From contig NC_043005.1 of assembly GCF_006345805.1 (NCBI RefSeq), positions 93,930,001-93,994,000 of the forward strand: a DNA stretch of 64,000 nt. The letters are read 5' to 3'. Positions 13,171 through 44,617 of this stretch are shown here, piece by piece (positions within the stretch are counted from its first letter, which is position 1; each line of letters opens with the position of its first letter). The notes under the pieces were generated by a model, which worked only from the letters and a program-made list of their open reading frames with translations, was not told the DNA's origin and did not search any database. Both the position numbers and the translations under genes were made by a program. Source of the stretch: Octopus sinensis (Eukaryota).

Positions 13171-13184
13171 TAGAGGAGCTATAT

Positions 13185-15950: not shown

Positions 15951-17149
15951 CTGCATAAAACTGGGTTAAGGAAATTGGCAGAAGAGAAAAAGTTTTAAAA
16001 AATACTGGATGTCAATATTTTCTTTTTAAATCAATTTATGAGAATGGTTAATATAATTAATCATGAACTAAGACATTGAGAATATCACATGGTATTTACT
16101 AATGGTAATTTGGGTAAATTAATTGACCCTGAATCATTGGGATTCAATTCCCTTCCTCTTATCACCCATACAGTCTCCTGCTCATCTTTCATCCTCAGAA
16201 CATCATCCTTCTCTAATTCCTATCCCTTCCATGGTTCTCCTGTAGGCATCAACTTGCAGTTCTTCAAGAAGAACATCAGCCAAATTAACCCTTCTGATAT
16301 CAATCTGCCTGAAATTACCCCCAGTTCTAGGATACAAACTTCATGTTTTAAAGTGATCTTTAAAGTTAATTTATGCTCAGACACTCGCTTAATAACGACC
16401 CTTTATTGCTAAATTCTTCATGGTTTTCAAAATTAATTGAAACAAATGCAGTATGTTTCAACAGAAATATTTTTAACAAAAGGGTTGAAGTGATCCAAAT
16501 TAAAACCTTCCATCAAAATTGCTCGTTAATTGATGTTAATAACACCAGCTGCATAATAAAGTTGTTATCAATTTCTTCATTATTTCAAAAATATTTCCCC
16601 ACAAATATGGTAATAAAAGGGTTAAATTCACTTGTCTGTGATTATCATAGGTTTAGAATCTTTCCCTTGTGTAAACCATTAAAAAAAACCCTTAAAACTA
16701 AGGATTTATTGATGTTTTTAAGCCCTCCTCCTTTAAAATGAGTTGCAAATGAAGTGGTAAGGTATTAGGTTGAATCAATCAAGACAAAACAAGATCTGAT
16801 TTATTGCCTGGAATATCCTTCATTTGAGGATCACTTTAGACAAGATATCAAATTACTTTGTTATTGACTTATCTTCATGGCAAGCTCATTTGTTGTCTTG
16901 AACATAGTTTTACTCAGAGAACTTTACTACAAACATATTTTAGAAGCTTTGGTGCATGCAATGTAAAACAAAAAAAAAAGTATTCACATAGTTTAACCTA
17001 GTATTTTATCACTTTTACTCTTGTGGAACTTTTGAAATACATTCCAAGTCTCAGAAAATCCTACATAAAAATTATTTATTTTAATTATTTTCTTTCCCTT
17101 TCATTAAGTTAAATTTCCCAAGAGAATACATAAATCATAAAACTACTTT

Positions 17150-19322
17150 CAAATGTTGACTCAGTAGAGGGACCATCTATCCGAATAGACAGCACCCTGG
17201 TGGATAAAGCAATTAAGGGTATGAAGCTTGTAAAAGCCCCTGGCCCATCAGGAATCACTGCTGAGATGCTTAAAATATCTGGTGGCGTGGGTTATGGCTT
17301 AGTCACACGTATTGTAATCAGGTAGTTCATAATAGAGTCATACCCAATGACTGGCGTAGCAGCACCATAGTCAACTGTTACAAGGGTAAGGGTGATCCCT
17401 TAGATAGAAATAACTACAGGGGTATGAAACTGCTGGATCAGGTGATGAAGGTCATGGAGAGGGTCATAGCCCAACTAATTAGGGAGAGAGTCTGTTTAGA
17501 CGAGATGCAGTTTGGTTTTGTGCTGGGTAGAAGCACCACTGATGCTATATTCCTGGTACGGCAACTGCAGGAGAAATACCTAGCCAAAGATAAACCCCTA
17601 TACATGGCTTTTGTAGACTTGGAGAAAACCTTTGACAGGGTCCCCCAATCCCTTATCTGGTGGGCCCTCTTATTCATCATAGTCCTCCAGGTAATAACAG
17701 AGGAATTCAAGACAGGTCACTCCTGGGAGCTTCTCTATGCTGATGACCTAATCCTCATACTAGAATCACTGCCAGAACTAGAAGAAATTTCAGGTGTAGA
17801 AGCAAGGTTTAGAATCGAAGGGCCTTAGAGTCAATGTCACAAAAACCAACGTCTTAGTAAGTAAGAAGGTGAACACATCATGCACCCCTTCGGGTAGATG
17901 GCCGTGCTTGATCTGTAGAAAAGGTGTAGATAGAAACTCTATAAGATGTAATCAGTGTAAGCTATGGATGCCTAAGAGGTGCAGCAACATCAAAGGAAGA
18001 TTAACCGGGAAGATAGCTTTCATGTGCAGCAGATGCACAGGAGCAATAAACATCACAGATGCTCAGAAAACAGATTCCTTCACATGCCAAGGGGAGAAAC
18101 CAGAAGTAGTTGATAGCTTCTGTTACCTAGGCAACCAAGTCTGTAGTGGGGGTGAATGCTGAGAGCGTTACCACTAGAATAAGAATAGCCTGGGCAAAGT
18201 TCAGAAAAATCCTACCTCTACTGGTGACAGAGGGCCTCTCTCTCAGAGTGAAAGGTACATTGTACGATGCATGTGTGCAAACTGCCATGCTTCACAGCGG
18301 TGAAACATGGGTCGTGACTGCTGAAGACATGTGTAAGCTCAAAAGAAATGAAGCTAGCATGATCTGTTGAATGTGTAATGTCAGTGTGCATACATGACAG
18401 AATGTAAGCGCTCTGAGAGAAATGTTGGACATAAGCAGCATTGGATGTGGTATGTACGTGACCATACCTGCGCTGGTATGGTCACGTACTACAGATGGAT
18501 GAGGAGAGCTGTATGAAGAAGTGTCACTTCTAAACAGTGGAAGGAACCTGTGATAGAGGGAGACCTAGGAAGACATGGGATGAGGTGGTGAAGCATGACC
18601 TTCTAACGTTGGGCCTCACAGAGGCAATGACGAAAGACCAAGATCTCTGGAGATATGCTGTGACAGAGAAGACCCAGCAAATAAAATGAGATCACAGCTG
18701 TAGCCTACGCCAGTGTCGCATAACCAGCCCACTCAAAAAGTACCTTTGGATCATAGGGCCACATGCTGTGCTTGAGGAGACCTATTGAATCAAGTACATC
18801 AACATCAAATCAAACCACAATCAAATGGAAATTGTGATTGTGGCTGATGCCAGCACTGCCTGTCAGGCACCCCGTGCCAGTGGCACATAAAAAACACCAT
18901 CCAAACATGGTTGATGCCATCCCCCTCACCCTGACTGGCTTCTGTGCCAGTGACATGTAAAGAGCACCATTTGAATGTGACTGATGTCAGTGTCACATTG
19001 ACTGGCTCCTGTGCTGGTGACACATGAAAAGTACAATCCGAATGTGACCGACGTCAGTGCCCCTTGACTGGCTCCTGTGCCAGTGACATGTAAAAGCATC
19101 ATCCAAATGTGGTCAATGCCAGCCCCTTCTGGCCCCTATGCCATTTGACATGTATAAACCACCCACTATACTCTCGGAGTGGTCGGTGTTAGGAAGGGCA
19201 TCTAGCTGTAGAAACACTGCCAGATCAGATTGGAGCCTGGTGCAGTCTCCTGGCTTCCCAGACCCTAGTCGAACCATTCAACCCATGCTAGCATGGAAAA
19301 CAGACATTAAACGATGATGATG
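17150..19322 (+). mobile_element. RTE-clade LINE, decayed, with an internal deletion in RT
   Basis: KAPGPSGITAEMLK; QFGFVLGRSTTDAIFLVRQLQEKY; AFVDLEKTFDRVP; LLYADDL. 3' UTR repeats and tail to about 19322. Confidence 0.9.
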
Positions 19323-20379
19323 AATTAAACACACACACAAAAAAACACTCACATAGACCAGTTATATGCAAATACCTCGCAATCAAGTAATTTTGGATTT
19401 AGTTCCACAGTTTAGCATCTTGGGTAAGTTTCTTCTACTATAGCCCTGGGTCAACCAAAACCTTGTAAATGGATTTAGTAGACAGGAACTGAAAGATACC
19501 TATCATATGTGTATACATGTGTAAGTATATATTTACTTTGTTTGTATGCATTTTTCACTGACTGTAAACAATGCTTGCAGTCTGTATGGAAAGCATGTAT
19601 GGAAAGCATGGAAAGCATGTCCAGACTATTTGTTAAGAGAAAGGGCTTTTGAAAATTTTGCTCCTGTCACATGCCAGCATGGAAAAGCAGGCATTAAAAC
19701 AATGATGATAATGACAATATGTGCAAATATATTTATCTCTATTTCTCCCTCGTGAGCTTGTGAAATCATAGGATTCCAGTAAGACTAGTTTAATCTGTAA
19801 CAATAAACAATTTTAATTATAGAAAATTATAAATTTTTTCATTTATTGTTAGTCAATAAATAAAGCATGATTACGAAGGTTTTATATTTCACCTTAAAAA
19901 TTTGAAAAAATTATATTTGCAGTAGTTCAGCAGTTCTCAACTATTTTATAATTCAGTGCCCCCACCACCACCACCACACTTCAATGAATGATGTTTTACA
20001 TATATACCTTGTCTCCATGTTTTGGCAATCACTACCACCAAAGCAGATTATTTTAATTAAACAAAACCTGGTTTTGATCATTGATTTAATATCCTATTTG
20101 TTTATATGATTTTTCATGTTAGCATAGGTTTGATGGGCAGGTACTGAAGGCAGAATTTTTTTATGCTTAGATACTCTTCCTGTTACACTTATCTGTTTTT
20201 CGAGTAAAAGAAATTTTTTTATTTTATTGTAGAAGAATTTGTAAACCCAGAGCTAATGGATTTGTTTATAATGTCAAGAGATGTCACCAATCGCAGCCTA
20301 GTTACAAACTGTCACCAGTGTTTGCAACCCAGCTCCAAGTAGTGATGGTCATCATATGCAGCCAGAGTCCAGCACAGAT

Positions 20380-20570
20380 TGTAGCCATTCACTCCACCTC
20401 ACTGGCACACACAAATGAATTCCTTTCGGTTTCTACCCAACAAATTTCTTCACAAAGAATTGGTCATCTCAGGGTAGAAGACATTTGTTTAAGGTGCCTT
20501 CAGTGGGCCTGAACCAAAAGACATAATTGAGAAGTGAACTTCTTAACCACACATCCATACCTGTGCCTTA
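20380..20570 (-). mobile_element. Decayed SINE family B head
   Basis: tcctttcggtttctacc...gtgggcctgaacc...ttaaccacacatccatacctgtgcc is the reverse complement of the family B head. Confidence 0.5.
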
Positions 20571-21479: not shown

Positions 21480-21730
21480 ACAGAGTAGAAATGAGCTGAA
21501 GGAAATATGTCTAAGAATTATCAGATGTAGTGTGCAAGAGTGTGTAGTTTACTGATAGAAACACATGATGAAAATGGAAGAGAACAGCTGGGTAAAGAAG
21601 TTTCAAGCAATTTATGTAGAAGACATTTGTGGAAAAGGAAGACTGACAAAGTTTGGGAAGGAATGGTAAAAGCTGAGTCCAGGAAGCTGAAACTCTCGAA
21701 AGAGATGACAAAAAATAGCAACAAGTAGCT
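21480..21730 (+). mobile_element. Highly decayed RTE 3' fragment
   Basis: Resembles ...cagatgtagtgtgcaagag...gatgaaa...acagctgggtaaagaag...tggaaaaggaagac of other copies. Confidence 0.45.
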
Positions 21731-22699
21731 AGATATTGTGCTCCGCAACACCTGTCCAATCAATGTAAATATGGAAAAAAATGAAGGTAAAAATAAACAT
21801 CGATAATGACATTGATAATGATCTCTATTCTGTCAAATCTGATTTAATTGGAAGGAGAGAAAGAGTAGGAAAGCAGCTAATTTGAATATTTGTATAACAT
21901 GAGAAGGTATGAGAAAATTAATATACCATAATTGGTAACGATAAGATTTTGAATAGGAAATAATATAAAAAAAAAAGAGACGAAACTATTTCACCAACTC
22001 TTTCATCTAACTATGTGAAATACGTGTGTAGGAGAATGAAACAAAAGATCATATGCAGAAAAAAATTATTGGCTATAAATAATTAGCAGAGACAAACTGG
22101 CAAACTCTTTAATTGGTTTCAGTCATTGAACTGTGGCCATGGTGGAGCGCTGTCTTCCAAGTTTGAGTTGATAAAATTGACCTTCAGTGCCTACTTGAGA
22201 TCAGTCTGTTTTTGTTGAGCCAATAAGAAGACCAATGACATTTGCCAGGCATTAAGAAAAAAAACAAAAACAAACAATTTGATGGGCTTCCACATAGTTT
22301 GTGTTTACCAAATTCCACTCACAAGGTATTGATTGGTCTGACACTAACCCTAACTGTCCAAGGACAATTAAAACACAAACATACTCAGACACAACACACA
22401 CACGAACAAACACATATACACACATGCGCACACACAACACCTTGACAAATACCAATCACACACACAACACCAGGACAATCATAACAACACAAACATACTC
22501 AGACAGACACACACATAATATCCCCACCAACACAAAAAACACACAAGCATACACACGCACTCACAGATGCACACACTCGAACAAACACATACACACACAC
22601 AACGCCCTAAAACATATTAATCACACACACACAAACGTTCACACATATACACACACCTGGTATTAACTGCAGAACTCGAAATGTAGTTTACAGCATAAG

Positions 22700-22976
22700 A
22701 TGCATAGAAGGTGCTTGTAAAGACATGAACATGATGTACATAGGGGAGACGTCTAGGAACATTGTGGAACAGATAAATGAACATCTAAGACAATATGACG
22801 ACAGAAAACAGTCCTCCATACTCTACCAGCATGCCAAAGACCACCATGGAGGCAACTTGGGTCAACTTGACATCCGCATCTTATCCAAGCACCCAAAAGA
22901 CCCAACACTCAGACAAATACAGGAGTATGTCTTTATAAATGAAACCTCCCCAATACTAAATAGGAAATATACATAG
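22700..22976 (+). mobile_element. Penelope-like element GIY-YIG endonuclease fragment
   Basis: MYIGETSRNIVEQINEH...SSILYQHAKDHH...RQIQEYVFINETSPILNRK, flanked by CA-rich tracts. Confidence 0.7.
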
Positions 22977-23706
22977 CAGATATCGTACCTCCGTACCCAC
23001 AGTTCACACAGGTAGAGTAGAATAGTTAGTGGGCTGTTATGTAGATAGATGTATGTATGTGTGGGAGTGAGTGTGTGTATGGACATGTACTTTTCTTTTT
23101 GTATGTAAGCATATGGATATGAAAATAAACAGATCAACATACAGACAGATAGGTACATAGGTTATAAGAGCAGACAAGCACACATATGCAAATGGAGACT
23201 GAAACACATGACCATATACACACACACACTTTACTCCACACAAGGACACATATGGAGACACGGATCCACACATACAGAGATGCACATCCATACATACAAA
23301 CATGGTACATAGTTGCATAACACACACAAGGAGACAGAGGTGCATACATATACAAATACACACACGCATACATAGAAAATACACAAACACAGACATGCAA
23401 GCACACACACAGGATACATCCATACAGATGCACACATATATACATATGCATACACACATATACACATACAATGCAAACATACATATGTACATGCATAGGC
23501 ACACACACACTAACCCACACATGCACACAAACAAAAGGGAACACAGTGTAAATAATGGACAGAGTCAAGACTATTGAAAAGGTTGCAAGACAACGAAAAT
23601 TTTAGGAAAATAAAAATAAGGAATAAATGGAAATTTTACCGGTGAGTGTGTTACATTATAAGACTCTAAAAGAAAATGAGTCTCCCCTGACACAACAGAA
23701 TATATA

Positions 23707-23758
<52 letters not shown>

Positions 23759-23790
23759 CTATATATATATATATATATATATACTTAATA

Positions 23791-24471
23791 ATTAGGGTTC
23801 AGCAAAGATTTGCTTTACCACATACCGAAGTTTAGAAATAGCAGCCAAAAAACGTTAGCTATTTCTTCTACTTTAAAAAGGGACTCCCAGAAAGACCAAA
23901 ATACTTGAAAACAATCCACACAGGCAGAGAGGAAAAGTAACGAAAATCAATCAATATCTGGTCACCTATGGTGACCATAGGTACATAGGTTATAAGAGCA
24001 GACAAGCACACATATGCAAATGGAGACTGAAACACATGACCATATATACACACACACTTTATTCCACACAAGGACACATATGAAGACACGGATCCACACA
24101 TACAGAGATGCACATCCATACATACAAACATGGTACATAGTTGCATAACACACACACACACAGACATGCACACACAAGGAGACAGAGGTGCATACATATA
24201 CAAATACACACTTACACACACGCATACATAGAAAATACACAAACACAGACATGCAAGCACATGAATATGCAGGATACATACATCTGGTCACCATAGGTGA
24301 CCAGATATTGATTGATTTTCGTTACTTTTCCTCTCTGCCTGTGTGGTTTGTTTTCAAGTATTTTGGTCTTTCTGGGAGTCCCTTTTTAAAGTAGAAGAAA
24401 TAGCTAACGTTTTTTGGCTGCTATTTCTAAACTTCGGTATGTGGTAAAGCAAATCTTTGCTGAACCCTAAT
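23791..24471. repeat. Fold-back structure: 186-bp inverted arms around a ~310-bp copy of nearby sequence
   Basis: 23791-23976 is the reverse complement of 24286-24471 (1 mismatch seen). The spacer resembles 23149-23425. Confidence 0.85.
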
Positions 24472-24730
24472 GGGTACAACCTCTTCCGCAAGGACCGCAT
24501 TAACCGCCGTGGTGGTGGTGTGATGGTCGACGTTCGTTCAAATTTTTCAGTAATTCCTTGTGCCGATTTGAACGAATCACAAGAAGAAGTTTTTTTCTGT
24601 GACGTACGTATGACCATGTCAACAATCCTGCTTGGTGCTGTTTATCGTCCCCCAAATTACCATCGGGACACACAGCTTTGCGATATCCTCCGAGCTGCTG
24701 CCAGGAAAACAGCCACTTATGTTTTTATTG
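24472..24730 (+). mobile_element. CR1/L2-group LINE AP-endonuclease fragment
   Basis: GYNLFRKDRINRRGGGV...TILLGAVYRPPNYH; same family as 59386-62760. Confidence 0.8.
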
Positions 24731-24809
24731 AAATGATAATGATGCTACACTGTCCTTTGGTTTACATGGTTTATACTTTCACACTATTTTGGCTTGCATC
24801 CAATTTTTA

Positions 24810-25120
24810 TATCTTTTATTCTTTTACTTGTTTCAGCCATTTGACTGCGGCCATGCTGGAGCATTGCTTTGAAGAATTTTAGTCAAACACATCAAACCCC
24901 TAGTACTTATTTTTCCTAAAGCCAGGTACTCAATGTATCAGTCTCATCTGCTGAACTGCTAAGTTATGGAGATACATACACACCAACATCAATTGTCAAG
25001 CGGTGTGTGTGTGAGGGGACAAACACACGCACACATATGTACAATGGACTTCTTTCAGTTTAGTAAAAGACACTTGTCCAAGGTGCCACAGTGGGATTGA
25101 GCCTGGAAGCAAACTTCTTA
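24810..25120 (-). mobile_element. SINE family B, decayed, near full length
   Basis: Reverse complement of the tail (ttacttgtttcagccatttgactgcggccatgctggagc) and the head (gacacttgtccaaggtgccacagtggga). Confidence 0.65.
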
Positions 25121-25387: not shown

Positions 25388-26178
25388 AGTGGATAAGGAA
25401 GAAAGAAGATATCCTCAAATCAGAGATCTGACACAAATTCTTGCAACAGAAAGGCCTCTGCTAAAGATACCCAATGTGCCATGCGGTAGTGTTAAAGCAA
25501 CTGACACATTAGTCCTCTACCCAAATAAGTCCATTCATTGAAAAGCCTGGTTCTATGAAGTTGTTGAAGGTGAACATCTTAAAGCTAGGCTCAGGTTTAC
25601 ATGGGTAACACTCAGTGAAAATCTCAAGTGTCCTCAACAATCCTCAAGTTTAGTTAGCCAAGAAGTTCATTGCACTAATGGAAACCAGCTAAATCCAGTA
25701 GAAAACCAGTAATTAAGCACTCTGAATTGATTGCAGGAAGCTTAGTTATGAAGGTGTTTCTAGAAGGAAAATTGTTGAGAAACTGGAAGGCAGGATGTGT
25801 GGGTTATAAAGTGATAAGCTTAGAGAAATGAACTTCAGATGATGTTCGAAGGGAAAGAAGGGGAGGGGAAAGAGATAGGGCATAATTGGAGAGAAAATGT
25901 TAGCAGGAATGAGAGGGAAATGGAAACAATAGGGGAAAAACAGAAAATGATGGGAGGGGAGGGGGCGTTTATAGTGAGATGGTGGTGGGGTAGAGTGTGA
26001 GAGGATGAATAAAAGAGAAAAATATCTGAAAAGGTTCACAGAAATTTAGTGTTTCACAAATTGTCATATGTATAATTAACTCCTCTCATTAATAAATGGT
26101 TGAATTAAATAATTCTCTTCCTCACCATTTTATTATATTCCTGTATTTCCAATAAATGATGTTGTCACTGCTGTTGTA

Positions 26179-26217
<39 letters not shown>

Positions 26218-26658
26218 TTTCTCTAAGCTTATCACTTTATAACCCACACATCCTGCCTTCCAGTTTCTCAACAATTTTCCTTCTAGAAACACCTTCATAA
26301 CTAAGCTTCCTGCAATCAATTCAGAGTGCTTAATTACTGGTTTTCTACTGGATTTAGCTGGTTTCCATTAGTGCAATGAACTTCTTGGCTAACTAAACTT
26401 GAGGATTGTTGAGGACACTTGAGATTTTCACTGAGTGTTACCCATGTAAACCTGAGCCTAGCTTTAAGATGTTCACCTTCAACAACTTCATAGAACCAGG
26501 CTTTTCAATGAATGGACTTATTTGGGTAGAGGACTAATGTGTCAGTTGCTTTAACACTACCGCATGGCACATTGGGTATCTTTAGCAGAGGCCTTTCTGT
26601 TGCAAGAATTTGTGTCAGATCTCTGATTTGAGGATATCTTCTTTCTTCCTTATCCACT
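25388..26658. repeat. 445-bp apparently perfect inverted duplication with a 381-bp spacer
   Basis: 25388-25832 is the reverse complement of 26214-26658. The right arm begins at the end of a (TA)n tract. Confidence 0.9.
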
Positions 26659-26811
26659 ACTCTCAGATGTCTTGTAAATGGTCATGAGCATTGCTATCTC
26701 CTTAGTATAATAACAAAAAAAGGGAATAATAGAGATACCAACATGCATATACATACAAACACAGATATGTCCACCATATGGAAAAAAAACAACAACATTG
26801 CATACATCCAG

Positions 26812-31170: not shown

Positions 31171-34100
31171 TAACAAGTATAAATAAAGCAAAAATTAGTA
31201 GGTTATAACCTGGGCATAAATTAGGTTTAAAATGATAAAAGAATGAAACAGATGTCTAATTTATATTAACATATTGTTCATACAAATATCATTAACATAT
31301 TGTTTTGTTTATTAAAAAGGTCAGTTTTCATGATCAAGCAACAAAGTCAAGTAATGCTTTATATCAGCAGGTTAAAAGTAATTTGTCATTTTGGAATTAT
31401 AGCTGCATGAAGAGTGGAACTTGGCTTAAGAAACTTAATAGTTATGGAGTTGCTTTCAAAACACAATACAGGTAGTTACTCTAGAACCCAAAAGAGCTCA
31501 TAATAATTAGTGCTCAGCCTATTTTGTAGACTTAAAGTGAATGAGGAATAAACCTTACAGTACATAGGATGGCTGTCAGGCTGTTTGAGGTAACATTCTC
31601 AGAAGAGATAATATCAATTTCTGGCAACAAGATGAACTGAGGCACAACTTATTATGTTGTCTGTATAAATATGTAAGGGCCTCTGTTGGTCAATGTTGAC
31701 TGTGTACCTGTAGATACATGTGCAGGAATGGACAAGATTTCTTTTAGGAAGACTGGCAGTTATACTGCATGCAAGTCTTTCCTCTCCACAAAGCCGTTTT
31801 TTATTCAAGGGAAAGGCTGCCAACTTGGGTTGCTACATGTTGGCAATAGATGTGTAAAAATTAACACTTCCTTTCTCCAACCTTAGATTTGAAACCGAAT
31901 CTAAAGATTCTCACTTGTTTGAGCCACCACTGACCAAACAGGCGCAAAAGAAATTCGTCCTGTCATAAAAAATTGATCGATTGTCTCCCTTCCACCTCCG
32001 ACCTCACCCATGTCAGGTGAAGGTCAAATGGAGATTTAGGCACAATCTCTCCTGTGGTATGTCTGTCCTTCTAGCTGCCATGGCTGGTTATAAATACAGT
32101 AATCAGCAAAGGGGACAGACAGAAAGGATCTGGGATGCAGAGACACACATAGCCGACCAGTATTTTCTCAGATGAACAACACATACTGACACAAAACATA
32201 TTCATTTCTACATCATATCCACAGATGTATCCTGTTGTTTTCCTTCTCCAGCTCAAAGCAGTTGGCAACAAATTGATGTAGACAAAAATTGTGTATACCA
32301 ACAGAAAACGCAAGTCCCATAAAGATATTATTTAAACTATAAATCGATGTCATTCCATTTTGGAAGGCATCCACATGCCTATCGCATCTGTTCACCTCAA
32401 CACCTGATACACACCTTTTCCACCACAGATATATTACAAGCATTGCTGTCAGAATGCAGAGAGCTGATACAGATATCACAAGTCATCTTGCCCAACTTTC
32501 TAATAGTTCTACCAATCCACTTGGTTGGTAGTCTTTTTATAATCAACCCCCAAAAGAATGAAAGGAAAAACTGACCTTGGCAAGATCTGAACTTAGAACA
32601 AATATCATGAGACTATTCTATTGAATGCTCTAATCACTGCCAAGTTGTCACATTCCAAATAAATAAATTTTATTTTGGTGGATTTAAATACAAATTATAT
32701 AAGCAGGTAAGTCACTGATCCAATCATTTTGCTTCTTTACAAAAGATAGTTGTGGGACAGCTGCTTGAAAAGGCCAAAAGCTCAAACCAGAAGACATAGT
32801 TCACTGATAACTTCAAGCAACTTAGTTGAAACATTATACAAAGGAAGCGGTTAGGGTTAATATTTGAAGTTAACATTATACAAGAGTTAGTTGGTGTTAG
32901 AAAGGACATCATATGTGAAGTTTGTAAAAATGACTAAATTACAGAACCACTTTGATCCTGCTCATATACAATGGCATGAGGTGCTGTGAAGAACAGATGA
33001 CTCATAGAACTGACAGAGTCAACTTTTAGATTTGAGTAAATTTATACTACATGTATTGAATATGTTTTTCTCTAGTCTGGAAATCCAAATGTATACACAT
33101 GAGACTTCCCCTGGTTGGCCTTGAGCTATGGTAGAAGATAGCTGAGGTGTCACAGAGTGGGACTGAACCCCAAACCAGACAGACTGGTTACTGACAAATG
33201 AAAAAAAAAAGAGCTTTTAAAGAGGCCCGGATATCATCATCATCATAATCACTTAACATTTGATTTCCAAGCTGGCATGAGTTGGGTGGTTTGACAGGAG
33301 CTGGCCAGGTTCCATGTCTGTTTTGGTATGGTTTCTATGGCTAGATGCCCTTCCTAACAATAACCATTTTATAGATTGTGCTTTTACACAGCACCAGCAT
33401 TGATGCATTTACATGGTACTGGCACGAATGCTTTACATGTGGCACCAGTACCCACAAGCCCACAAGATTAGGAATGCAGGAGACATAATTGCATGCAAGA
33501 ACAACCAAGTTTTTACTAAGCAAACTGCCAGGAGACTCAGTCCCCTGTCATCCCCTCTGTGAGTCCCAACATCTGTAGATCCTTTCTCACCACTTTGTCC
33601 ATCTTTCTGGGTCTACCCCTTCCCACATGTTCCCTCTACAATTAGAGATCAGCATCTCTTGATGTGTCTTCATTCATACACATTACATGATTGTACCAGC
33701 ACAGTCTTCTCTCTTGCAAACTATGTTTAATTCATTTTCGTTTTTGCAATTCTTACATGCTCTCCATACAGTGTAGTTTGGATGATCTTGAAAATGTAGA
33801 GATATTTGTTTAAATAATCATCACAAGGGTTCCACATCTCCCCACCACCATTGTTAAGCTGTCATATATCTTCACAAATCAATAGATTTTCTCTGATAAT
33901 GACTTGTTTGTTTCATTAATCATTGATCTCACTATAATTAGAGAAAGAGAGTGAACAGCTGTTGTTTCTATAGGAAACGTTTGTGTACCAGATGGATTAA
34001 ACAATCCAATGGGGGAGTACCTTTTGAACTGCTAGAAATAACAGTCAAATTTCCTCCAAATCACATCATATTGTCTTAGAAAATAAGAAAAGCAAGGACA

Positions 34101-34565: not shown

Positions 34566-34877
34566 TCTAATATAATAAATGTGAATGTCAGTGTGTGTCA
34601 CTTTTTCACCTCATAGCCCAACATATGCCATTTTGGAATTAGGCTGACTCTGTGAGTAAATTAGAAACATTCCAGGCCGAATCTGCACCTGCAATCCTGA
34701 AATTTTGGATTCCTGTGTTTTCAGAACTGCAAATGTTTTTGGTAATTTTTTTACATGATTTTTGCAACAAATATGAACATCATTGAGATATGACTCTGGA
34801 GGAAGCAATGCAACAAATTTTCCAAAAGAAGTCAAAGATCTGTTTGCAGATCTTCCCATTCAAAAGCTATATACTAG
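34566..34877 (+). mobile_element. Small non-autonomous Helitron
   Basis: A|TCTAATATAATAAATG start; hairpin aagatctg-tttg-cagatctt (34835-34854); CTAG|T end at 34874-34878. Confidence 0.5.
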
Positions 34878-37859
34878 TTTAAAAGCCGCCTGATAAGAAA
34901 TAAGATGGTCATGACTGGAATGTTTTTGATCATAGGTCAGCTCTATTTGGGTTAACTTGGTGTTTAACAACAATAAATAAGACAAGTTATAGAGAGGCAA
35001 AAAACATTTACATATAAAAACTCATAGCCTTTAAGAAATATTCTAAAAGATATTGGTTCCTCAGATAAGGATACAACTCCTATTCAAATAAGCTTGCCAT
35101 TTCTCATTTTCCTACATTTCACCCACCACCACTCACCAAAACCCAATGCTACACATTTTCTACAGTCTTTACCCTTTCTGGCAATATGCACTCTTTGATA
35201 AGTCACCCCCTGTCCCTGTTTACTCTTCAACAGTTAACCTAGTTCCTACTAAACATCAACAGCACTGACTTCTCTAAATTATTCACAAAACATTCCAGTT
35301 TAAAACTTTTGTTACCATATTTCTGTTGAAATATACTCTCTTAGTTCCAACTAATTCTGAAAGTTAGTAAAATAACACAGTTGTTATTAAACTGGACTTT
35401 GAAACAAATTAACTTGGAATTTTCATAGATTTTAATTTAGATCACTTTAGACAGGAAAATTATATCACAGGGACAGTTGGCATTGAAAGAATAAAGGTAA
35501 CCAAAAATACAAGAATATCAGCATTCCTTACATATGAAGGCAACATCTATTTTATTACCATCATTTTAAGGCCTACATTTCAAAGCTTGCATAGGTCAGA
35601 TGGAATTCATTAAGGCAGATTTTCTATAGTTAAATGCCTTTCCTGTCAGCAATTGTCACCAATTTCCAAGAAAAGAATTATTTCCCCATAGCCAAACGTC
35701 TTTCACAGAAGATTGGAAACAAACACCACCACTTGTATGACAGTGACATTCATTTGCAACCACCAGTGATGTCAAGACAAGGCTGTGTGCTCACATAGAC
35801 AAAAGCCATCTTTTAAATACACTCACAAGGCTTTCGCCAGCCTTGGGCTGTAGCAGAAGGCATTTGCTCAAGGTGTTGCACAATGAAACTGAACCCAAAA
35901 CCACATGTCTGGGAAGCAAGCCTCTCAGCCACACAACCATGTGTGTGTGTACATGAGTGAGTACGTATTCCCTTTCTCTCAACCCATATGTGCTGGCTGT
36001 AAACAATGAGTCACCATTTATCTAAATGAGTCATTTACATTCCTTCACAGCCATGGCCAGACTGTTCAGTTTGTTATTCTAGGGGAAAATATTATTTATT
36101 CTTGGCAACAGATAAGGGCTGGTGACAAGAAGAGCATCCAGCCATAGAAACCTGTTTCAGCAAAGTTATTGTGTAACCCATATAAGCATGGGAAAAAAGT
36201 GGTTAAAACCGATGAGGATGATTTGTTATAAAGGCATAAAACCCCAAATTTACAGGAACATTGTTTGTAATATCTCTATACTTTCCAGAAGCAGACATTG
36301 GTGCTTGATGCAATTCTCACCAGCACCTGTCAAACCATCCAACCCATGCCAGCATGGAAAGCGGACATAAGTGAAACAAGCCTAGCTAGGAAATAAACAT
36401 GAGCCACAGATTTGGTTCCCTGACTATCACTACAGTCAGGTACCTTAATCTTTCCAACACACATAACACAAATACTAATTCACTTGTAACCAATAACCCA
36501 CTGGCCATCATCGAAGAGAGCAACAGATTTCATTATCAGGGGAGGAATGAATACCATTGAATAACCATGCAGAAAGAGTGATGAACGCAATAATGAGGGA
36601 GTATGGTGGACAAAGGAGGGCTTATGGGGGAGGGGGACGACAAGAACGATGGTAACTCATTGAGTTAGTGTTGATAATCTTTTATCTTCTTTTGCTTGTT
36701 TTACTAAATGAACTGCGGCACCAACTCGAAGGGGTTTAATTGAACAAATCAATCCCCACTACATTTATTTTTTTAAAATCTGGTACTTATTCTATCCATC
36801 TCTTTTGCTGAACTACTAAGTTAAACAGATATAAATAAACCAACACCATTGCTTCCTCCAGAGTCATATCTCAATGATGTTCATATTTGTTGCAAACATC
36901 ATGTAAAAAAATTACCAAAAACATTTGCATCTCATATAATAAATCTCAGTGTGGAGTAATAAAAGTAGTGATGGAAAGAGAACAACACACCCACACACAC
37001 ACAAGTAAAAGGGAAGAGATAAGACAGACAAAATATTTTACTTCTTGAAGCAGTTCCCAGAACAAGACTTCCATTATGTGCAGCAGTAAACGAAAGCAAT
37101 TCTTTATGTCCCTGGAAGAATCAAAACACTCCTTCAGCAAACAGTGACTTCACAGCAATGGAGAAAATAACATGACCTTTTTTTTTATCAATGGGTTTTA
37201 TTCATTTGATTAAATAGATCTGTTTAGAGAAAAACCTGGTCTTTAATCATGCCACAAACTTCTCACTCCTACATCTGGAGTGTATTCTTTAAAAAGAAAA
37301 ATTGGCATTCCTCTTACCACCACCACCACCACTACTATACTGTGTTAATAAATTCCATTCAGTGAAAATTTTGCTCAGGATGGGATCGCCTAGTGACTTA
37401 ATACAGCCCTGCTTAGACCTTTTTGATACCAATCTGTCTGAGAGCCCCTGGTACTATGATGCAAACTTCCTGTTTTCAAGTACACCAAATTAAAAAAAAA
37501 CCTTACATTGAAATGTCATGTTAATTAATGTTCCAAACACTAAGTTAATAATGACACAGCTATTTTACTAAATTCTTCATTATTTTCAAAATTAAATGGA
37601 ACGAAGATGGTGCTTTTTAACAAAAGTACTAAATAGCACAGTCGACTGTGCCAGGATTTGAACTTAGATAAATGTATTCACTGGATATGGCAAACTTCAC
37701 ACACTTCTTGAAATAACGTTACTGCGAAATATTATAACTGGGGTGAATAAATTTACAAAATTGTTATCAGATGTAGGTAATATATATCCTCTTTTCAATA
37801 CTAAACCAATTCATTAAAAAAAAACAAGTTTCTCACATCCCCCACCTCTCTCTAGCATG

Positions 37860-38330
37860 TGCTATATCATAAGACATCAACAATCATGGACCACCAAACT
37901 TTACTGTCCTCCACATTCACCTTAAACACATTATGAACCAGTCTTTCTGAAACCAGATTGTAAAGCCAATCTAGTATCTTCTTTCTCTCTCTTCCCTGAT
38001 TCCTTCTTCCTTTTAATTCCCCATTTGTCACCAAATGTTCTAGGTTTTTCTTCTCATGATATCTAATGAACTGAGCTTGTTGTCTCCTTACGTTGTCGAG
38101 TAACTTTCTGGTGATCTTTGCCCATCTAAGGGTGGCGATATTTATCACTATCTTCAGAAATCTTCTAAGGGACCATATCTCAGCAGCATTGATAAGCTGT
38201 TGAACTTCTCTGCATGTGTTCCAAGTTACATAACCCTATGCAAGGATGGCCACTCAGGACAGTGTGTTGTGTTCTTGTGTAAAATAAAATGCATTTTATG
38301 CTGTTCCAATCAACTCATCGGTAAATCAGT
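37860..38330 (-). mobile_element. Decayed RTE-clade LINE 3' fragment
   Basis: RRQQAQFIR...NLEHLVTNGELKGRRNQGRER is a typical RTE RT C-terminus. Confidence 0.6.
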
Positions 38331-39529: not shown

Positions 39530-39603
<74 letters not shown>

Positions 39604-39959
39604 CTAAAACAATACTCCCTTCCATGAAGAGGACAAAAAGAAAGGCAGCAAAGAGGGGAAAATGTCTACTCCCCAAAGATGATATTCAGATGTAGTGTGT
39701 AATCCAACAAACAGTAGGCTCCACCCAGATGTGAAAAGGGTAGCAGCTGAACAAAAATCCTTTTTGTGCATGGCACAAAAGATTGCCCAGCAGCTGACCT
39801 GGCTACAAACACAAACTTGAAACAACACACAAGGCTACCACTAACACCAACAAAGATGTCACAATAGTATTTCTTCTAAGTATCAGAGGGCTGTTGCACA
39901 TCAACTGTAAAACAAAAATCTAATTCCTGAGAGACCTTGCTGCATGCAATCAAGTTCTA

Positions 39960-41290
39960 TGTATAGCACTTGTGGAAACGTATCTTAGACCTAAAACAAG
40001 AGATGCAGAAATACACATACTACAATATGTTGTCATATGCTCAAATAGAAAAGGAGCCAGGGTGGAGTTGCTGTGTACATCTGAGAGGACCTCATGCCCC
40101 AGGTCCTGCTGTCATATCCAAATTCAGTTTGTGACACTCAAATTGTACACATAAGACCACTTAATTTTGTCATATGTACTACATATTGTTCACCGAATGC
40201 TCCAAATCATACAGGTAAGTTTGAAGACTGCCTAGCAAAGATAGAAGTTCTCACCAAACTGGAACAACACATCAGTGTATTCCTTTTGAGTGACTTTAAC
40301 TTCCTCACTGTGGGATAGCCTGAGGGCCTATGCTCCCAGGAATGAAACACCACCAGCAAGCACAGGCAGAGACCCTGCTTCACCTTATTAATGCTTCTTT
40401 CATGGAGCAAACTGTGCTGTAACCAACCAGCTTCAAAAACAATATGGACATTATCCATAATGTTAAAGTGACACCAACACTGGTCTCAGATCACAACATA
40501 ATAGAGCTGTCTGTGTATGGACCAAAAGCCCCTGTAGATGTACAGCCTATAAGAAGCATCCAAAATGTCTCCAAACTGAATTTTCATAAAGCAAATGGGA
40601 AGTTTATTGAGAAAGAGATCCTCATTAAATGGCCTAAATGTCTCTCCACACCAGACATTGACATGAAACACAAACAAGCCATATGTGACAAATCTGTCCC
40701 ACAGCACAGGACCAACATACACAAAAACAGGATCCCTAGGGAAAGGAAGATTCTTATGAACTGGCAAAGACTACAAACCACCTGAACAAGCACCCCAAAA
40801 GTGGTAGGAGTCTCACCTGGAGAGAGTGTCATTGGAGATTGTTAAAAGTTTGCATCAATCTCATGAAAAGCAGAGCAGATAAGAAATCTTGGGTTATAGA
40901 AAATATCAAGTCAAACTTTAAAGCTTTCTTTAACTTTGCCAAAGAAACAATCTCAGTATGCCACAAGATAGGACCCCTCTTTCAAAACAATAGCTCCAGC
41001 TCCCTCACAGGAAACCCAATGAGGATAAGTGAAATACTGAACGAACAGTTCCAAAGTGTGTTCACTACACATCTGGGACACAGGCAAGTGAACAAACCAG
41101 CAAAATTCTTTGCCACTTTACCTGTAACTAAAGAGGCAAAAGTTGATTACCTCAACATTAAAGAAGATGTAACACTGGCCATAGATGGGGTTGATACAAA
41201 CTCAGCTGCTGTCCCTGATGGATTCCCAGTGATCCTCCTCAAATCGTGCAAACAAGCCCTTGCAAAACCACTGCACACACACACACATGC
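39960..41290 (+). mobile_element. Decayed CR1/L2-group LINE (AP endonuclease to start of RT)
   Basis: FLLSDFNF; SDHNIIEL; KAFFNFAK; NSAAVPDGFPVILLKSC. Confidence 0.75.
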
Positions 41291-44200
41291 ATATGATGCA
41301 CCAGTTTTGCCGTATGAAGATCCGACGACCTACTCTTTCTTTGTCAGTCATAATGCTTATGTCGAATGTGACATTTAAGTGCCACCAATGATTTGCAGAA
41401 AAGTTCACAGATCCTGCAACTGAAGCCTGTTAATGCTGGTTGCAACAAAGATTTTAACACCGTTTTGACACAATGATCTTCATTTTGTTCGTACCAAGGC
41501 TGTTTGCACAAAGGTGTTGTGAGTTATCTTCCCTCCCACCCATCCACTCTCAGTTTTTCTGTTCCACTCATGTCTACTCATCAGTGTCACCTTCTAGTGA
41601 CACTGAGCACCTCATCATGCTATGTATCTCTTTGCAGTTACCTACCGATTCAGTTCTCACTCTCTCTCTTAAATATCAAAAGTCAAGCAGCTCCTCTACA
41701 ACAAGAACATGCTCTGCCCCACCCCCTTCTACCTTAACCCACATCTGCTATCATGGAGCTCCTCCCTTGGGGTTTGGAGGCTTACAAATTGCATGGCAAC
41801 CTCACCAGTGCTGGTGGTATGAGAAAAGCACCCAGTGTACACTGCACAGTGTTTGACTTTAGGAAGGGCATTCATCCATTGAAATCATTAAAGCAGGCAC
41901 TGGAGCACGACGTGCTCCTTGGATTCACTGAAGCCTGTCAAACTACCCAATCCATGTCAGTATGGAACACGGACATTTTGACCATTATGAAATATCTGGC
42001 ACGATCAATTTTACATCCACTTTCAATGCTGTCATAAGCTGAACAAAACAGATAACATTCTACAGCCAGATGCTCCTCCGGTTGCCAACATTCATTTTTT
42101 AAGGAAGGTACTTTTTTTTTACTGGTGTTCCTACAACGAAATTGCTCAATGGAAGCATAAACATAACTGATGATGATTTATACACACGCAAGATCATTGT
42201 AATGTCGTTGTGCAATCAAAACATTTTAATAAATAGTTTCACCTATGACAATTCGTCTGTGAAGAACAATTAGCAGCTTCACTCATCTATCGCATCATTA
42301 TTAAAAAAGAAAAATCTTCAACGCCATAACTGCCAATTAATTTATTTTAATTAAGTATTTATAACTTCATCTTTATTTTGCAAAGACGTGTGAAGACAAC
42401 TGTTTACAAGTAGAAAAAGATATATAAGTGAAAGAAATTTATCGATGGCTCGCAGGCAGAGACAAGTAATGTGATTCAGGGGTATCCCAGAGAAAACAAA
42501 AACTGCAAAACGTTATTTCTAGAACTTTAGAATCTTATTTAAATGTGTAAAAAATTCTTTCATTTGCTCTTTTCACAAATTTACCTTCCCATGAAAGAAC
42601 TTAAGTTTAACAAATTTAAAATTGTACAAGGACTTTATGACGCGTGTGTGTGTGTAACAATGGAATTTTATGAGTGGAGTGGTAGACAATTTGTCTGGTT
42701 GTCAGTTAATGCAGTATTTCCTCAAGGTCTGCCAGGGATTGTTAAATTCGTTGTCACACTTCCCATTCTTAAAACTAAAAATAAATAACTGGTGTAATGT
42801 GTGAATGAGATGTCCTCGTTAGTCACTACCCTAAAACCGTTTGTAAACTAAGTAGGTCATGAGGTGTGGCCACATTCTAACCGCTTCTATATTGACTTTT
42901 TCCTTGTTTTATTAAAAAGTTACACGACTCATGTTGTTGTCAGATTTTCTAAAAGAATGGAACGTTTGCACAAACAAAAAAAGAAAATCTTATAGTAAGT
43001 CTAATGAGGATTATATGCAATAACGAAATTGTCTAACATATTATTAAAGTGCTTTTAATAGGAAGAAAAAAGGTGTGGCGAGAAATAGAGTTAAAATGAC
43101 TTTGTTATATCGCTAGAGACACCAATTGGTTACCTGTATAAAAAGGCTACCATATAAAACAGTACAACATTGTGTCCACTAGCAAGGAAACGGAAATAAA
43201 AATTACTATTAGGTGGAGAAACTAAACTTCATATTATATTTCAGTACCATGAATATAAAGCTAGGGTAACTCTTTGTTGTCGTTCAGCTGCAGGTCAGCC
43301 ACGATCTAGCAGAGCTATGATGAAAGGCATTCCGCTACGATCATCCATTCATTTCTTACGCACACGTTACTCAACGTGTCCGTTTCTTAAACAGGCGTGA
43401 CTTGAGGGGGATATTTGTCGCTTTCTAGCAGGTTGAAAAACCACCGACTTCCTTGTTGATTATGTAATTGGAGGAGGGGGACTGACAACTTTTATCTGAG
43501 TCCCAGATCCATTCATGTTTTCCTGTGATATCCAGGAAACAATTCACATGTATATCTAAGTATGTGGATACCATAATTTTTGTTTTTTCCTTCCTGGATA
43601 AAACAACACTATGTTAATAATATGTTATGTAACGGCTACGCAATAACATTTTTTATCTTACACCTTGACAATAGTTTTTATAGCTAACAAGTATCAATAT
43701 TTCAGGTTAGTCGTGTTTCTGTTTCAAATCTTAGTCAAAATTAAATATAAGTAGTAAATATAAAAACGGTATGAATCACAATGTGAGGGCAACGTGTATA
43801 GCAGTTTCTAATTTACGCATCAGGTAAGAAATTTGGAGGGAGGAGCAATTCGATACGGTCGATCCCAGGACTTGATTGGGACTCCGGAGGGATGAAAGGC
43901 AAAGCTGATCTCAGTGGAATGTGAATTAAGATTATGTAAAGTATCAGAAGAAATACCGCAAGGCATAAAACCAAAAAAAAATTTTAATCATCAAATACGT
44001 CAAACACTTCCAAGAAAGTTGTAGAAATCCAGACGTCATTCTTGCACGTAAGCTTCCCTCCTGATGAAGAGGCTTGGCTGGAAAAGGGTGAATGACGTCG
44101 TCTCTTCAAACCCGACACTCTGTAGACCAATATCGAAGGAATGATGAAATATGAACCTGTATGGGGATCGGTGATTAAAGCTAGTGATAGATAATAGAGC

Positions 44201-44617
44201 TTAAAAGGTAAAAAACGTAAAACGTGATATAAAAGGCTGGGACAGTAAGTTATCGGGACTAGAGTAATGAATAAATGGATTTACCAACCCAGTGCTGCAT
44301 TGATGAATGATATATAAATGAATAGATTGCCTTAATCTGTACCACCCTCCATTTTTTTTTTATGATACGATATAACGCGTAAATTACCGTATCTTTTTGA
44401 AACGTTTGATGAAAATAAACACGTGTTGGCAATTAGAGGAAATAAACATGATCAACGTTATCTTCGTTACACATGATAAGAGAAAATATAGCTATATTTC
44501 AATAACCTGAAAAAAGAATAGACAAATGGTACAATGAAATAAAAGCTTTTTAAAGGAAAGAATAATGATTCTAATACATTTCAAGTAGCTCAGAAAAAAA
44601 AGAAAAGAAAAGGATAC

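What the first reader, a model, noticed from the sequence alone, without database searches (positions are those of the whole stretch)
15951..44617. A 28.7-kb minor-spliceosome (U12-type) intron in the OCRL/INPP5B-like gene, filled with transposons
Seen in sequence: 5' splice site GTATCCTTTT and branch point TTCCTTAAC 16-17 nt from the AG. A nearer AG at 15962-15961, only about 4 nt past the branch A, would shift the frame. The next intron starts GTAAGT (U2 type). Established: these are the U12 consensus signals, and U12 introns are rare and often conserved in position across animals. Inference: an ancient minor intron has expanded to nearly half this window with LINE, SINE, MITE and PLE insertions. 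It could be rate-limiting for expression of this phosphatase. I cannot confirm whether the orthologous vertebrate intron is U12.
Basis: partly seen in the sequence, partly recalled or inferred. Interest (0 to 1): 0.7.

Follow-up and report, generated by a model that had tools for sequence, protein, structure and literature searches.

The report
Conserved minor-spliceosome intron in octopus OCRL/INPP5B
The first intron of an octopus OCRL/INPP5B-type phosphatase gene is a 28.7-kb U12-type (minor-spliceosome) intron at the same codon position as the catalogued U12 intron of vertebrate INPP5B and OCRL, so it is a real but ordinary ancient minor intron that has grown long in a repeat-rich genome.

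Summary
Observation confirmed. On the minus strand, exon 1 (ATG 44674 to 44618, MEALPLVKKLLADDEKCLI) is followed by GTATCCTTTT. TTCCTTAAC lies 15-16 nt before the CAG ending at 15951, and exon 2 (15950-15871) ends at GTAAGT.

The joined peptide is 96% identical to residues 1-46 of Octopus bimaculoides XP_014774614.1. That protein carries a full INPP5B_PH domain (53 bits).

I fetched four vertebrate loci: gibbon INPP5B, fish INPP5B-like, frog OCRL and woodpecker OCRL. Each has a U12-type intron in phase 0 in the same alignment column. Their termini vary (AT-AG, GT-AT, GT-AT, GT-AG).

The gibbon donor equals the INPP5B minor-intron donor listed by Olthof 2019. Sheth 2006 lists an INPP5B AT-AG U12 intron conserved between human and mouse. 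The intron therefore predates the protostome-deuterostome split.

About 30-37% of the intron is recognisably repeat-derived. It contains LINE reverse-transcriptase fragments and a GIY-YIG (Penelope-like) fragment. SINE and MITE calls are unverified. A long minor intron is expected in a genome with long introns.

No RNA evidence was available. The catalytic part of the gene lies outside the window. "Rate-limiting" is untested speculation.

The parts
44618..44674 (-). Coding part of exon 1 of the OCRL/INPP5B-type gene: ATG at 44674-44672, 19 codons, MEALPLVKKLLADDEKCLI. The 5' UTR extent is unknown.
   Evidence: Read directly. tblastn of O. bimaculoides P0001 residues 1-19 gives 100% identity, and this is the only such match in the window.
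44609..44617 (-). U12-type 5' splice site GTATCCTTT, phase 0, after the Ile19 codon ATT.
   Evidence: It matches the U12 consensus at all 9 positions. It is a very weak U2 donor, matching the U2 consensus only at +1 to +3.
15951..44617 (-). Intron 1, 28,667 nt, U12-type with GT-AG termini.
   Evidence: The junction is fixed by P0001. The same position and phase hold a U12-type intron in four vertebrate loci.
15965..15973 (-). U12 branch-point sequence TTCCTTAAC. The branch A is at 15966 or 15967, 15-16 nt from the 3' splice site.
   Evidence: It is the only TCCTTAAC in the window.
15951..15952 (-). 3' splice site AG (…TTTTATGCAG|AGT).
   Evidence: It keeps the frame CLI|SVRAG as in P0001. The nearer AG at 15962-15961 is 4-5 nt from the branch A and would shift the frame by 10 nt.
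15871..15950 (-). Exon 2, 80 nt, encoding SVRAGLVDNGKKISKYLVVVNRSGDK plus 2 nt of an Ala codon. This is part of the N-terminal region of the PH domain.
   Evidence: tblastn of P0001 residues 20-46 matches here.
15865..15870 (-). U2-type donor GTAAGT of intron 2, phase 2. Intron 2 runs off the window start and is therefore longer than 15.8 kb.
   Evidence: exon 3 is not in the window. The same phase-2 boundary occurs in gibbon, fish, frog and bird loci.
17134..18733 (+). LINE fragment (reverse transcriptase, PHD finger, C-terminal region), antisense to the gene.
   Evidence: RVT_1 47.8 bits and PHD 19 bits. It is 78% identical in DNA to the copy at 12174-13180.
18926..19323 (+). Multi-copy unit with a 67-bp tandem repeat, probably a LINE 3' tail or a SINE-like tail. 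At least 6 copies occur in the window.
   Evidence: No tRNA-like head was found.
22611..22973 (+). GIY-YIG nuclease-domain fragment, the endonuclease type of Penelope-like elements.
   Evidence: PF01541 24.4 bits, above the 22.6-bit cut-off. There is a weak tblastn match to the GIY-YIG ORF at 49366-49923.
24448..24879 (+). LINE endonuclease-region fragment.
   Evidence: Positions 24610-24729 are 82% identical in protein to the ORF at 61494-61997. There is no Pfam hit.
33519..33806 (-). LINE C-terminal fragment, in the sense orientation.
   Evidence: tblastn E=5.6e-12.
39924..41375 (+). Run of ORFs resembling the endonuclease to reverse-transcriptase N-terminal part of a LINE.
   Evidence: Judged by eye plus a weak Exo_endo_phos_2 hit (E=0.09). 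This is low confidence.

Best explanation
Intron 1 of the octopus orthologue of the OCRL/INPP5B family (type II inositol polyphosphate 5-phosphatases) is a U12-type GT-AG intron.

**Proposed mechanism.** U11 snRNP would pair with the donor GTATCCTTT. U12 snRNP would pair with TTCCTTAAC, bulging a branch A 15-16 nt upstream of the CAG. The minor spliceosome then joins codon 19 (Ile) to codon 20 (Ser) in phase 0, inside the N-terminal region of the PH domain. The AG 4-5 nt from the branch A is probably too close to the branch point to serve as the acceptor.

**Origin.** The intron is orthologous to intron 1 of vertebrate INPP5B and OCRL, which is U12-type in both paralogs. It was therefore present in the bilaterian ancestor, before the vertebrate OCRL/INPP5B duplication.

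**Length.** The 28.7-kb size reflects retrotransposon insertions and other repeats in a genome whose introns are long in general. It is not a property of minor splicing.

**Shown:** the motifs, their placement, the junction in a sister-species gene model, the family identity, and the conserved position and U12 character in vertebrates.

**Inferred:** actual removal by the minor spliceosome in octopus.
For: **Sequence signals**
- The motifs and distances were read directly.
- The donor matches the U12 consensus at 9 of 9 positions but matches the U2 consensus at only +1 to +3. Intron 2 has a perfect U2 donor, GTAAGT.
- The joint chance of both motifs at homology-fixed sites is about 4e-8.

**Junction**
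- O. bimaculoides XP_014774614.1 (P0001) residues 1-46 are 96% identical to exon 1 plus exon 2.
- Only one exon 1 match and one exon 2 match exist in the window.

**Family**
- INPP5B_PH is the only Pfam hit for the joined peptide, aligning residues 3-43 to profile 3-43 across the junction.
- P0001 scores 53.2 bits over profile positions 5-144 of 145.

**Orthologous introns, all phase 0**
- Gibbon INPP5B...GTC ATC|ATATCCTTCC...tcttctcttgactctgagccgcAG|GCG.
- Fish INPP5B-like: AAA ATA|GTATCCTCTC...tatccttagcagccgtgcacAT|GCT.
- Frog OCRL: GAC CCG|GTATCCTTTAC...tttccttgactcgctgcacAT|GTC, about 21.4 kb.
- Woodpecker OCRL: CTG CTC|GTATCCACC...tttccttagcggcggtgcAG|AGC, 116 nt.
- In alignment A2 every junction lies between columns 19 and 20, just before the invariant Val21.
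- The gibbon donor ATC|ATATCCTTC equals the INPP5B minor-intron donor in Olthof 2019 (PMC6717393 supplement).
- Sheth 2006 (PMC1557818, Table 3) lists an INPP5B AT-AG U12 intron conserved between human and mouse.
- Intron 2 is also conserved, in phase 2, so exon 2 is an orthologous unit.

**Background.** Molluscs are comparatively rich in minor introns, and minor and major intron lengths correlate across species with rho about 0.90 (PMC10639083).
Against: - No transcript evidence could be consulted. The O. bimaculoides model is an automatic prediction whose RNA support is unknown, and its locus could not be fetched.
- The joined peptide was absent from the 5.8-billion-protein word index.
- The branch-to-acceptor distance of 15-16 nt is towards the long end of the usual range.
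- A pyrimidine-rich stretch (CTTTTTCTCTTCTGCC) lies upstream of the branch motif, so a U2-type 3' end cannot be excluded from sequence alone.
- Phase 0 is the phase that minor introns classically avoid, although the vertebrate orthologous introns share it.
- No invertebrate other than octopus was compared.
Confidence: 0.88

Rival explanations
1. The intron descends from a U12 intron but is now removed by the major (U2-type) spliceosome, that is, it has switched type. It has GT-AG termini and a pyrimidine-rich stretch near the 3' end.
For: - GT-AG termini are compatible with both spliceosomes.
- A pyrimidine-rich tract lies upstream of the branch motif.
- Type switching is a known evolutionary route (general knowledge; discussed in PMC10639083).
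Against: - Both U12 motifs are perfect consensus. A switched intron is expected to lose them.
- The donor ATT|GTATCC pairs very poorly with U1, matching only +1 to +3.
- All four vertebrate counterparts keep U12 motifs, and three of them have non-GT-AG termini that the major spliceosome would not normally be expected to use.
Confidence: 0.05
2. The gene model is incomplete. Exon 1 and exon 2 are not joined directly in the main transcript, because of unannotated small exons, an alternative first exon, or stepwise removal within the 28.7 kb. The real U12 intron would then be shorter or different.
For: - No RNA data are available.
- The reading frame stays open upstream of the ATG, with a possible acceptor (caacag|gtataATG) just before it.
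- A second GTATCCTT lies at 35074 on the same strand inside the intron.
Against: - The O. bimaculoides protein joins residue 19 directly to residue 20.
- Vertebrate genes have the same two exons adjacent, with the ATG in the first.
- The Pfam profile alignment is collinear across the junction with no gap.
- A second GTATCCTT is within chance expectation.
Confidence: 0.05
3. The two motifs are chance matches next to chance open frames, and there is no gene here.
For: - Each 8-mer alone occurs at chance frequency in the window.
- Exon 2 is only a 32-codon open frame.
Against: - The joined peptide is 96% identical to the N-terminus of a protein with a significant INPP5B_PH domain.
- The joint placement probability is about 4e-8.
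- Intron positions are conserved on both sides of exon 2.
Confidence: 0.01

Closest known systems
Intron 1 of human and mouse INPP5B, a U12-type AT-AG minor intron listed in Sheth et al. 2006 (PMC1557818) and Olthof et al. 2019 / MIDB (PMC6717393)
   Same: - Same gene family.
- Same position: after codon 19, an Ile, immediately before the invariant Val21.
- Same phase 0.
- U12 donor xTATCCTT and a TCCTTxAC-type branch site 12-16 nt from the acceptor.
- Followed by a conserved phase-2 U2-type intron.
   Different: - Termini are GT-AG in octopus and AT-AG in mammals.
- Length is 28,667 nt, against 366 nt in gibbon and 345 nt in mouse.
- The octopus motifs are closer to the full consensus: TTCCTTAAC, against CTTCTCTTGAC in gibbon.
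Intron 1 of vertebrate OCRL (the Lowe syndrome gene), U12-type. Two minor introns are listed for mouse Ocrl in Olthof et al. 2019.
   Same: - Same aligned position and phase.
- In the woodpecker the junction reads GLL|SVAGAEV, against CLI|SVRAGLV in octopus, also with GT-AG termini.
- The frog OCRL intron is also long, at about 21.4 kb.
   Different: - OCRL has a shorter N-terminal lead: 10-13 codons before the intron instead of 19.
- The frog intron ends in AT.
- That the human OCRL donor GCC|GTATCCGCC follows Ala13 is inferred, not read from genomic DNA here.
Conserved ancient minor introns of metazoans in general (Larue and Roy 2023, PMC10639083)
   Same: - A minor intron retained at one position across bilaterians.
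- Terminal dinucleotides drift among subtypes.
- Length scales with the genome's general intron length.
   Different: It is in phase 0, the phase minor introns are classically biased against.

Membership tests
U12-type (minor-spliceosome) intron | 5' splice site [A/G]TATCCTT starting at +1 | tested here: met
   GTATCCTTTT at 44617-44608, matching the consensus at 9 of 9 positions.
U12-type (minor-spliceosome) intron | Branch-point sequence close to TTCCTTAAC | tested here: met
   Exact TTCCTTAAC at 15973-15965. It is the only TCCTTAAC in the window.
U12-type (minor-spliceosome) intron | Short, constrained distance from branch A to the 3' splice site (roughly 10-20 nt; from general knowledge) | tested here: met
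   15-16 nt. The four vertebrate counterparts have 12-14 nt.
U12-type (minor-spliceosome) intron | Poor fit to the U2-type donor consensus | tested here: met
   ATT|GTATCC matches CAG|GTRAGT only at +1 to +3. The neighbouring intron 2 donor is GTAAGT.
U12-type (minor-spliceosome) intron | Positional orthology with introns already classified as U12-type | tested here: met
   Same alignment column and phase as U12-type introns in gibbon INPP5B, fish INPP5B-like, frog OCRL and bird OCRL. The gibbon donor is identical to the catalogued human and mouse INPP5B minor-intron donor.
U12-type (minor-spliceosome) intron | Removal depends on U11/U12/U4atac/U6atac snRNPs | not testable with these tools
   No transcript or functional data are available. 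No minor snRNA genes are in the window (Rfam found nothing). The literature reports minor introns in Octopus sinensis and molluscs.
OCRL/INPP5B family (type II inositol polyphosphate 5-phosphatases) | N-terminal INPP5B/OCRL-type PH domain (PF16776 / PF16726) | tested here: met
   - The window's 46 aa give PF16776 as the only hit, at 18.5 bits and E=0.0018. This is below the 29.2-bit gathering score because only 41 of 145 profile positions are encoded here.
- The O. bimaculoides protein, 96% identical over those 46 aa, scores 53.2 bits at E=3.8e-14.
OCRL/INPP5B family (type II inositol polyphosphate 5-phosphatases) | 5-phosphatase catalytic domain followed by ASH and RhoGAP-like domains | tested here: inconclusive
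   - tblastn with human OCRL finds no catalytic-domain match in the window.
- Exon 3 onwards lies beyond the window start.
- The octopus model P0001 is truncated at 281 aa.
- In the fish and bird loci the PH-domain exons sit directly upstream of the catalytic, ASH and RhoGAP exons.

The most novel reading that the evidence does not exclude
The 28.7-kb, transposon-laden U12 intron is not removed in one step. Internal U12-like signals, such as the second GTATCCTT at 35074, or TE-derived sites would drive stepwise or decoy splicing. This intron would then be a real kinetic bottleneck, or a regulatory switch, for the octopus OCRL/INPP5B phosphatase. Nothing here tests this. The internal donor-like site is within chance expectation.
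Probability: 0.04. Interest if true: 0.5.

Novelty: new member of a known kind. Interest (0 to 1): 0.22.

Why it matters
The value is mainly confirmatory.

- **Dating.** It places the minor intron at the start of OCRL/INPP5B in or before the bilaterian ancestor, and before the vertebrate duplication that produced the Lowe syndrome gene OCRL.
- **Subtype drift.** One orthologous position carries AT-AG, GT-AT and GT-AG termini in different lineages while remaining U12-type.
- **Annotation.** Automatic pipelines mis-splice or split genes at this intron, so it is a useful landmark for repairing OCRL/INPP5B gene models.
- **Length.** The large size is what a repeat-rich, long-intron genome is expected to produce. 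It is not evidence of special regulation.

Tried and rejected
- **Word-index protein search with the joined 46-aa peptide.** No hit. The exhaustive HMMER search was needed to find the octopus protein.
The catalytic domain is absent and the PH domain is too diverged.
- **Fetching genomic loci.** The O. bimaculoides (P0001), Alosa (P0020) and Tiliqua (P0026) loci are not on record.
- **PDB sequence search with the peptide.** Only a spurious titin match.
- **Literature search for a remembered human OCRL variant name at c.40-14.** Nothing found. The claim that human OCRL exon 1 ends after codon 13 therefore stays an inference from the catalogued donor GCC|GTATCCGCC.
- **Translating whole intron frames for Pfam.** Replaced by selected stop-free segments.
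- **SINE.** No tRNA-like heads and no Rfam hit.
- **MITE.** Three inverted-repeat pairs were found, but none has a target-site duplication.
- **Invertebrate relatives other than octopus.** All hits of the profile search were vertebrate.
Full report
**1. What is in the sequence**

The gene is on the minus strand.
- **Exon 1.** An ATG at 44674-44672 opens 19 codons (MEALPLVKKLLADDEKCLI) ending at 44618.
- **Donor.** GTATCCTTTT follows directly.
- **Acceptor.** At the other end the sequence reads ...GCCAATTTCCTTAACCCAGTTTTATGCAG|AGTGTCCGA. The intron ends at 15951.
- **Exon 2.** It runs 15950-15871 (80 nt; SVRAGLVDNGKKISKYLVVVNRSGDK plus two bases of an Ala codon).
- **Intron 2.** It begins GTAAGT at 15870.
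- **Branch site.** The two A residues of TTCCTTAAC are 16 and 15 nt from the last intron base.
- **Nearer AG.** The AG at 15962-15961 is 4-5 nt past them. Using it would add 10 nt and break the frame.
- **Length.** The intron is 28,667 nt and contains no assembly gap. The only N run in the window is 46119-46218.

**2. Is it more than chance?**

Taken alone, the motifs are not above chance. GTATCCTT occurs twice in the window (2.4 expected) and TCCTTAAC once (2.2 expected).

The signal is their placement. Protein homology (section 3) fixes the two exon edges independently. The composition-based probability of finding ATCCTTT after the donor GT, and TCCTTAAC within the permitted distance of the acceptor, is about 4e-8. 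Empirically, only 2 of 3,952 GT sites and 4 of 3,631 AG sites on this strand qualify.

The donor is also a very poor U2-type site: ATT|GTATCC matches CAG|GTRAGT only at +1 to +3. The next intron has a textbook U2 donor.

**3.

- A word-index search with the joined 46-aa peptide found nothing.
- Human OCRL found no catalytic-domain match in the window.
- Pfam's only hit for the joined peptide was INPP5B_PH (PF16776). Residues 3-43 aligned to profile positions 3-43, so the alignment crosses the junction. E was 0.0018. Exon 2 alone gave no hit.
- The exhaustive HMMER search found one strong match. P0001 has residues 1-46 96% identical to the joined peptide.
- P0001 is XP_014774614.1 of Octopus bimaculoides. 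It scores 53.2 bits (E=3.8e-14) against INPP5B_PH over profile positions 5-144 of 145.

The window is therefore from an octopus closely related to O. bimaculoides. It holds the first two coding exons of its OCRL/INPP5B-type gene, and the exon 1 to exon 2 join exists in an independent gene model.

Mapping P0001 back gives one match for residues 1-19 and one for residues 20-46, and nothing for later residues. There is no nearer copy of exon 1. Exon 3 lies beyond the window start, so intron 2 is longer than 15.8 kb. The catalytic, ASH and RhoGAP-like parts of the gene could not be examined.

**4. Is the orthologous vertebrate intron U12-type?**

Yes, in both paralogs. Published catalogues already say so:
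- Sheth et al. 2006 list INPP5B with a U12-type AT-AG intron conserved between human and mouse.
- The supplementary tables of Olthof et al. 2019 list two minor introns each for mouse Inpp5b and Ocrl. In each gene one lies at the extreme 5' end. The listed donors are ATC|ATATCCTTC (INPP5B) and GCC|GTATCCGCC (human OCRL).

I then read four genomic loci directly.

| Locus | Sequence at the intron ends | Termini | Length |
|---|---|---|---|
| Gibbon INPP5B | ...TGC GTC ATC\|ATATCCTTCC...tcttctcttgactctgagccgcAG\|GCG GTG CAA | AT-AG | 366 nt |
| Fish (Rhinichthys) INPP5B-like | ...TGC AAA ATA\|GTATCCTCTC...tatccttagcagccgtgcacAT\|GCT GTG GAG | GT-AT | 407 nt |
| Frog (Anomaloglossus) OCRL-like | ...GAC CCG\|GTATCCTTTAC...tttccttgactcgctgcacAT\|GTC GTG GAA | GT-AT | about 21.4 kb |
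| Woodpecker OCRL-like | ...CTG CTC\|GTATCCACC...tttccttagcggcggtgcAG\|AGC GTG GCC | GT-AG | 116 nt |

The gibbon and fish introns follow codon 19. The gibbon donor is identical to the catalogued human one.

All four are in phase 0. In a MAFFT alignment of the real N-termini (A2), every junction falls between columns 19 and 20, one residue before the only invariant internal residue, Val21 in octopus numbering. The frog gap placement is ambiguous but compatible.

The boundary after exon 2 is conserved as well, in phase 2:
- octopus GC|GTAAGT
- gibbon and fish GC|GTGAGT
- frog GT|GTAAGT
- bird GG|GTGAGT

Exon 2 is thus an orthologous unit, flanked by a U12-type intron on one side and a U2-type intron on the other.

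The simplest reading is that a U12-type intron was already at this position in the last common ancestor of cephalopods and vertebrates, before the OCRL/INPP5B duplication. Terminal dinucleotides have drifted since then, while the U12 donor and branch motifs were kept.

**5. What fills the intron?**

- **LINE pieces.** A reverse transcriptase (RVT_1, 47.8 bits), a PHD finger and a C-terminal region lie at 17134-18733 on the plus strand. This segment is 78% identical in DNA to a copy in intron 2 at 12174-13180. Further LINE fragments lie at 21481-21722, 24448-24879 and 33519-33806. A probable LINE 5' half lies at 39924-41375.
- **PLE-like piece.** A GIY-YIG nuclease fragment at 22611-22973 scores above the Pfam cut-off (24.4 bits against 22.6).
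- **Multi-copy unit.** A unit with a 67-bp tandem repeat at 18926-19323 has at least six copies in the window. No tRNA-like head or Rfam family was found, so 'SINE' is not established.
- **Inverted repeats.** Three pairs exist, with arms of 445 nt at 100%, 193 nt at 98% and 83 nt at 99%. None has a target-site duplication, so 'MITE' is not established.
- **Total.** Self-comparison finds a second copy within the window for 15.5% of the intron. The union of everything recognised is 30-37%. This is a lower bound because no repeat library was available.
- **Orientation.** Six of the eight strand-assigned TE pieces (including the non-coding multi-copy unit) are antisense to the gene.

**6. How unusual is the length?**

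It is not very unusual.
- Intron 2 of the same gene is longer than 15.8 kb.
- The frog OCRL counterpart is about 21 kb.
- Across eukaryotes, median minor and major intron lengths correlate with rho about 0.90. Molluscs are relatively rich in minor introns, and Octopus sinensis was part of that survey (Larue and Roy 2023).

The one slightly atypical feature is phase 0, which minor introns classically avoid. The vertebrate orthologous introns share it.

**7. What remains inferred**

- No transcript data could be consulted, and the O. bimaculoides locus was not retrievable. Use of the minor spliceosome in octopus is therefore inferred from motifs and orthology.
- The idea that this intron limits expression is untested.
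- A type-switched intron, now removed by the major spliceosome, is unlikely. Both motifs are perfect and U1 complementarity is minimal.
- An unannotated intermediate exon cannot be ruled out, but it is disfavoured by the collinear profile alignment and by the conserved two-exon arrangement.

**8. Verdict**

The result is a new cephalopod member of a catalogued, conserved minor intron. It is of modest interest, mainly for dating the intron and as a landmark for gene-model repair.

Noticed in passing
L001 1501-2019 (gibbon INPP5B), L004 1501-1730 (woodpecker OCRL), L003 and L004 gene tables, P0001: Automatic gene models mishandle this U12 intron. The gibbon model replaces Val-Ile by Pro-Gln by choosing a nearby GT...AG pair instead of the AT-AG sites. 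The woodpecker model reads intronic sequence (AVTVTVLSLAAVQ) instead of using GTATCC...CAG. In fish, woodpecker and octopus the PH-domain exons are annotated as a short separate gene, upstream of the catalytic-domain gene in fish and woodpecker.
   Followed up: partly
L001, L002, L003, L004 and window 15951-44617: One orthologous or paralogous intron position carries three terminal-dinucleotide subtypes while keeping U12 donor and branch motifs: AT-AG (gibbon INPP5B), GT-AT (fish INPP5B-like, frog OCRL), and GT-AG (woodpecker OCRL, octopus).
   Followed up: yes
window 25388-26658: A perfect (100%) 445-nt inverted repeat with a 381-nt spacer ending in a (TA)n run. It is either a very young foldback element or a palindromic assembly artefact. 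If it is an artefact, the intron length is slightly overstated.
   Followed up: partly
window 34728-36929: 83-nt inverted repeats, 99% complementary, bound a 2.2-kb segment. No target-site duplication was seen. The segment contains the window's second GTATCCTT (35074, minus strand), a possible decoy U12 donor that is within chance expectation.
   Followed up: partly
window 7204-9348 (minus strand): A Helitron-like element sits inside intron 2. It has a PIF1-like helicase ORF (PF05970, 211.8 bits; Pif1_2B 45.7 bits), with a further long ORF upstream of it.
   Followed up: partly
window 59675-61997 (minus strand): A largely intact LINE lies about 15 kb upstream of the gene. It has a 532-aa reverse-transcriptase ORF (RVT_1, 100.9 bits) preceded by a 167-aa endonuclease-region ORF. 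It is the same family as the fragment at 24448-24879 inside the intron.
   Followed up: partly
window 49366-49923 (plus strand) and 46390-46662: An ORF with a weak GIY-YIG match (16.8 bits, below the cut-off) and a related fragment. These are possible Penelope-like element remnants upstream of the gene.
   Followed up: no
window 46119-46218: A 100-N assembly gap lies about 1.4 kb upstream of the start codon. The promoter and 5' UTR region is therefore incompletely assembled.
   Followed up: no
window 22300-24260, 46997-48380, 50545-50937, 54600-55545: Long TG/TA/CA-rich microsatellite-like tracts produce many spurious long ORFs rich in Y, I, C, V, H and T on both strands.
   Followed up: no
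window 15865-15870 and L001-L004: Intron 2 (U2-type, phase 2) is also conserved in position between octopus and both vertebrate paralogs. Exon 2 is 80 nt in octopus, 83 nt in fish and frog, 81 nt in woodpecker, and 95 nt in gibbon.
   Followed up: yes
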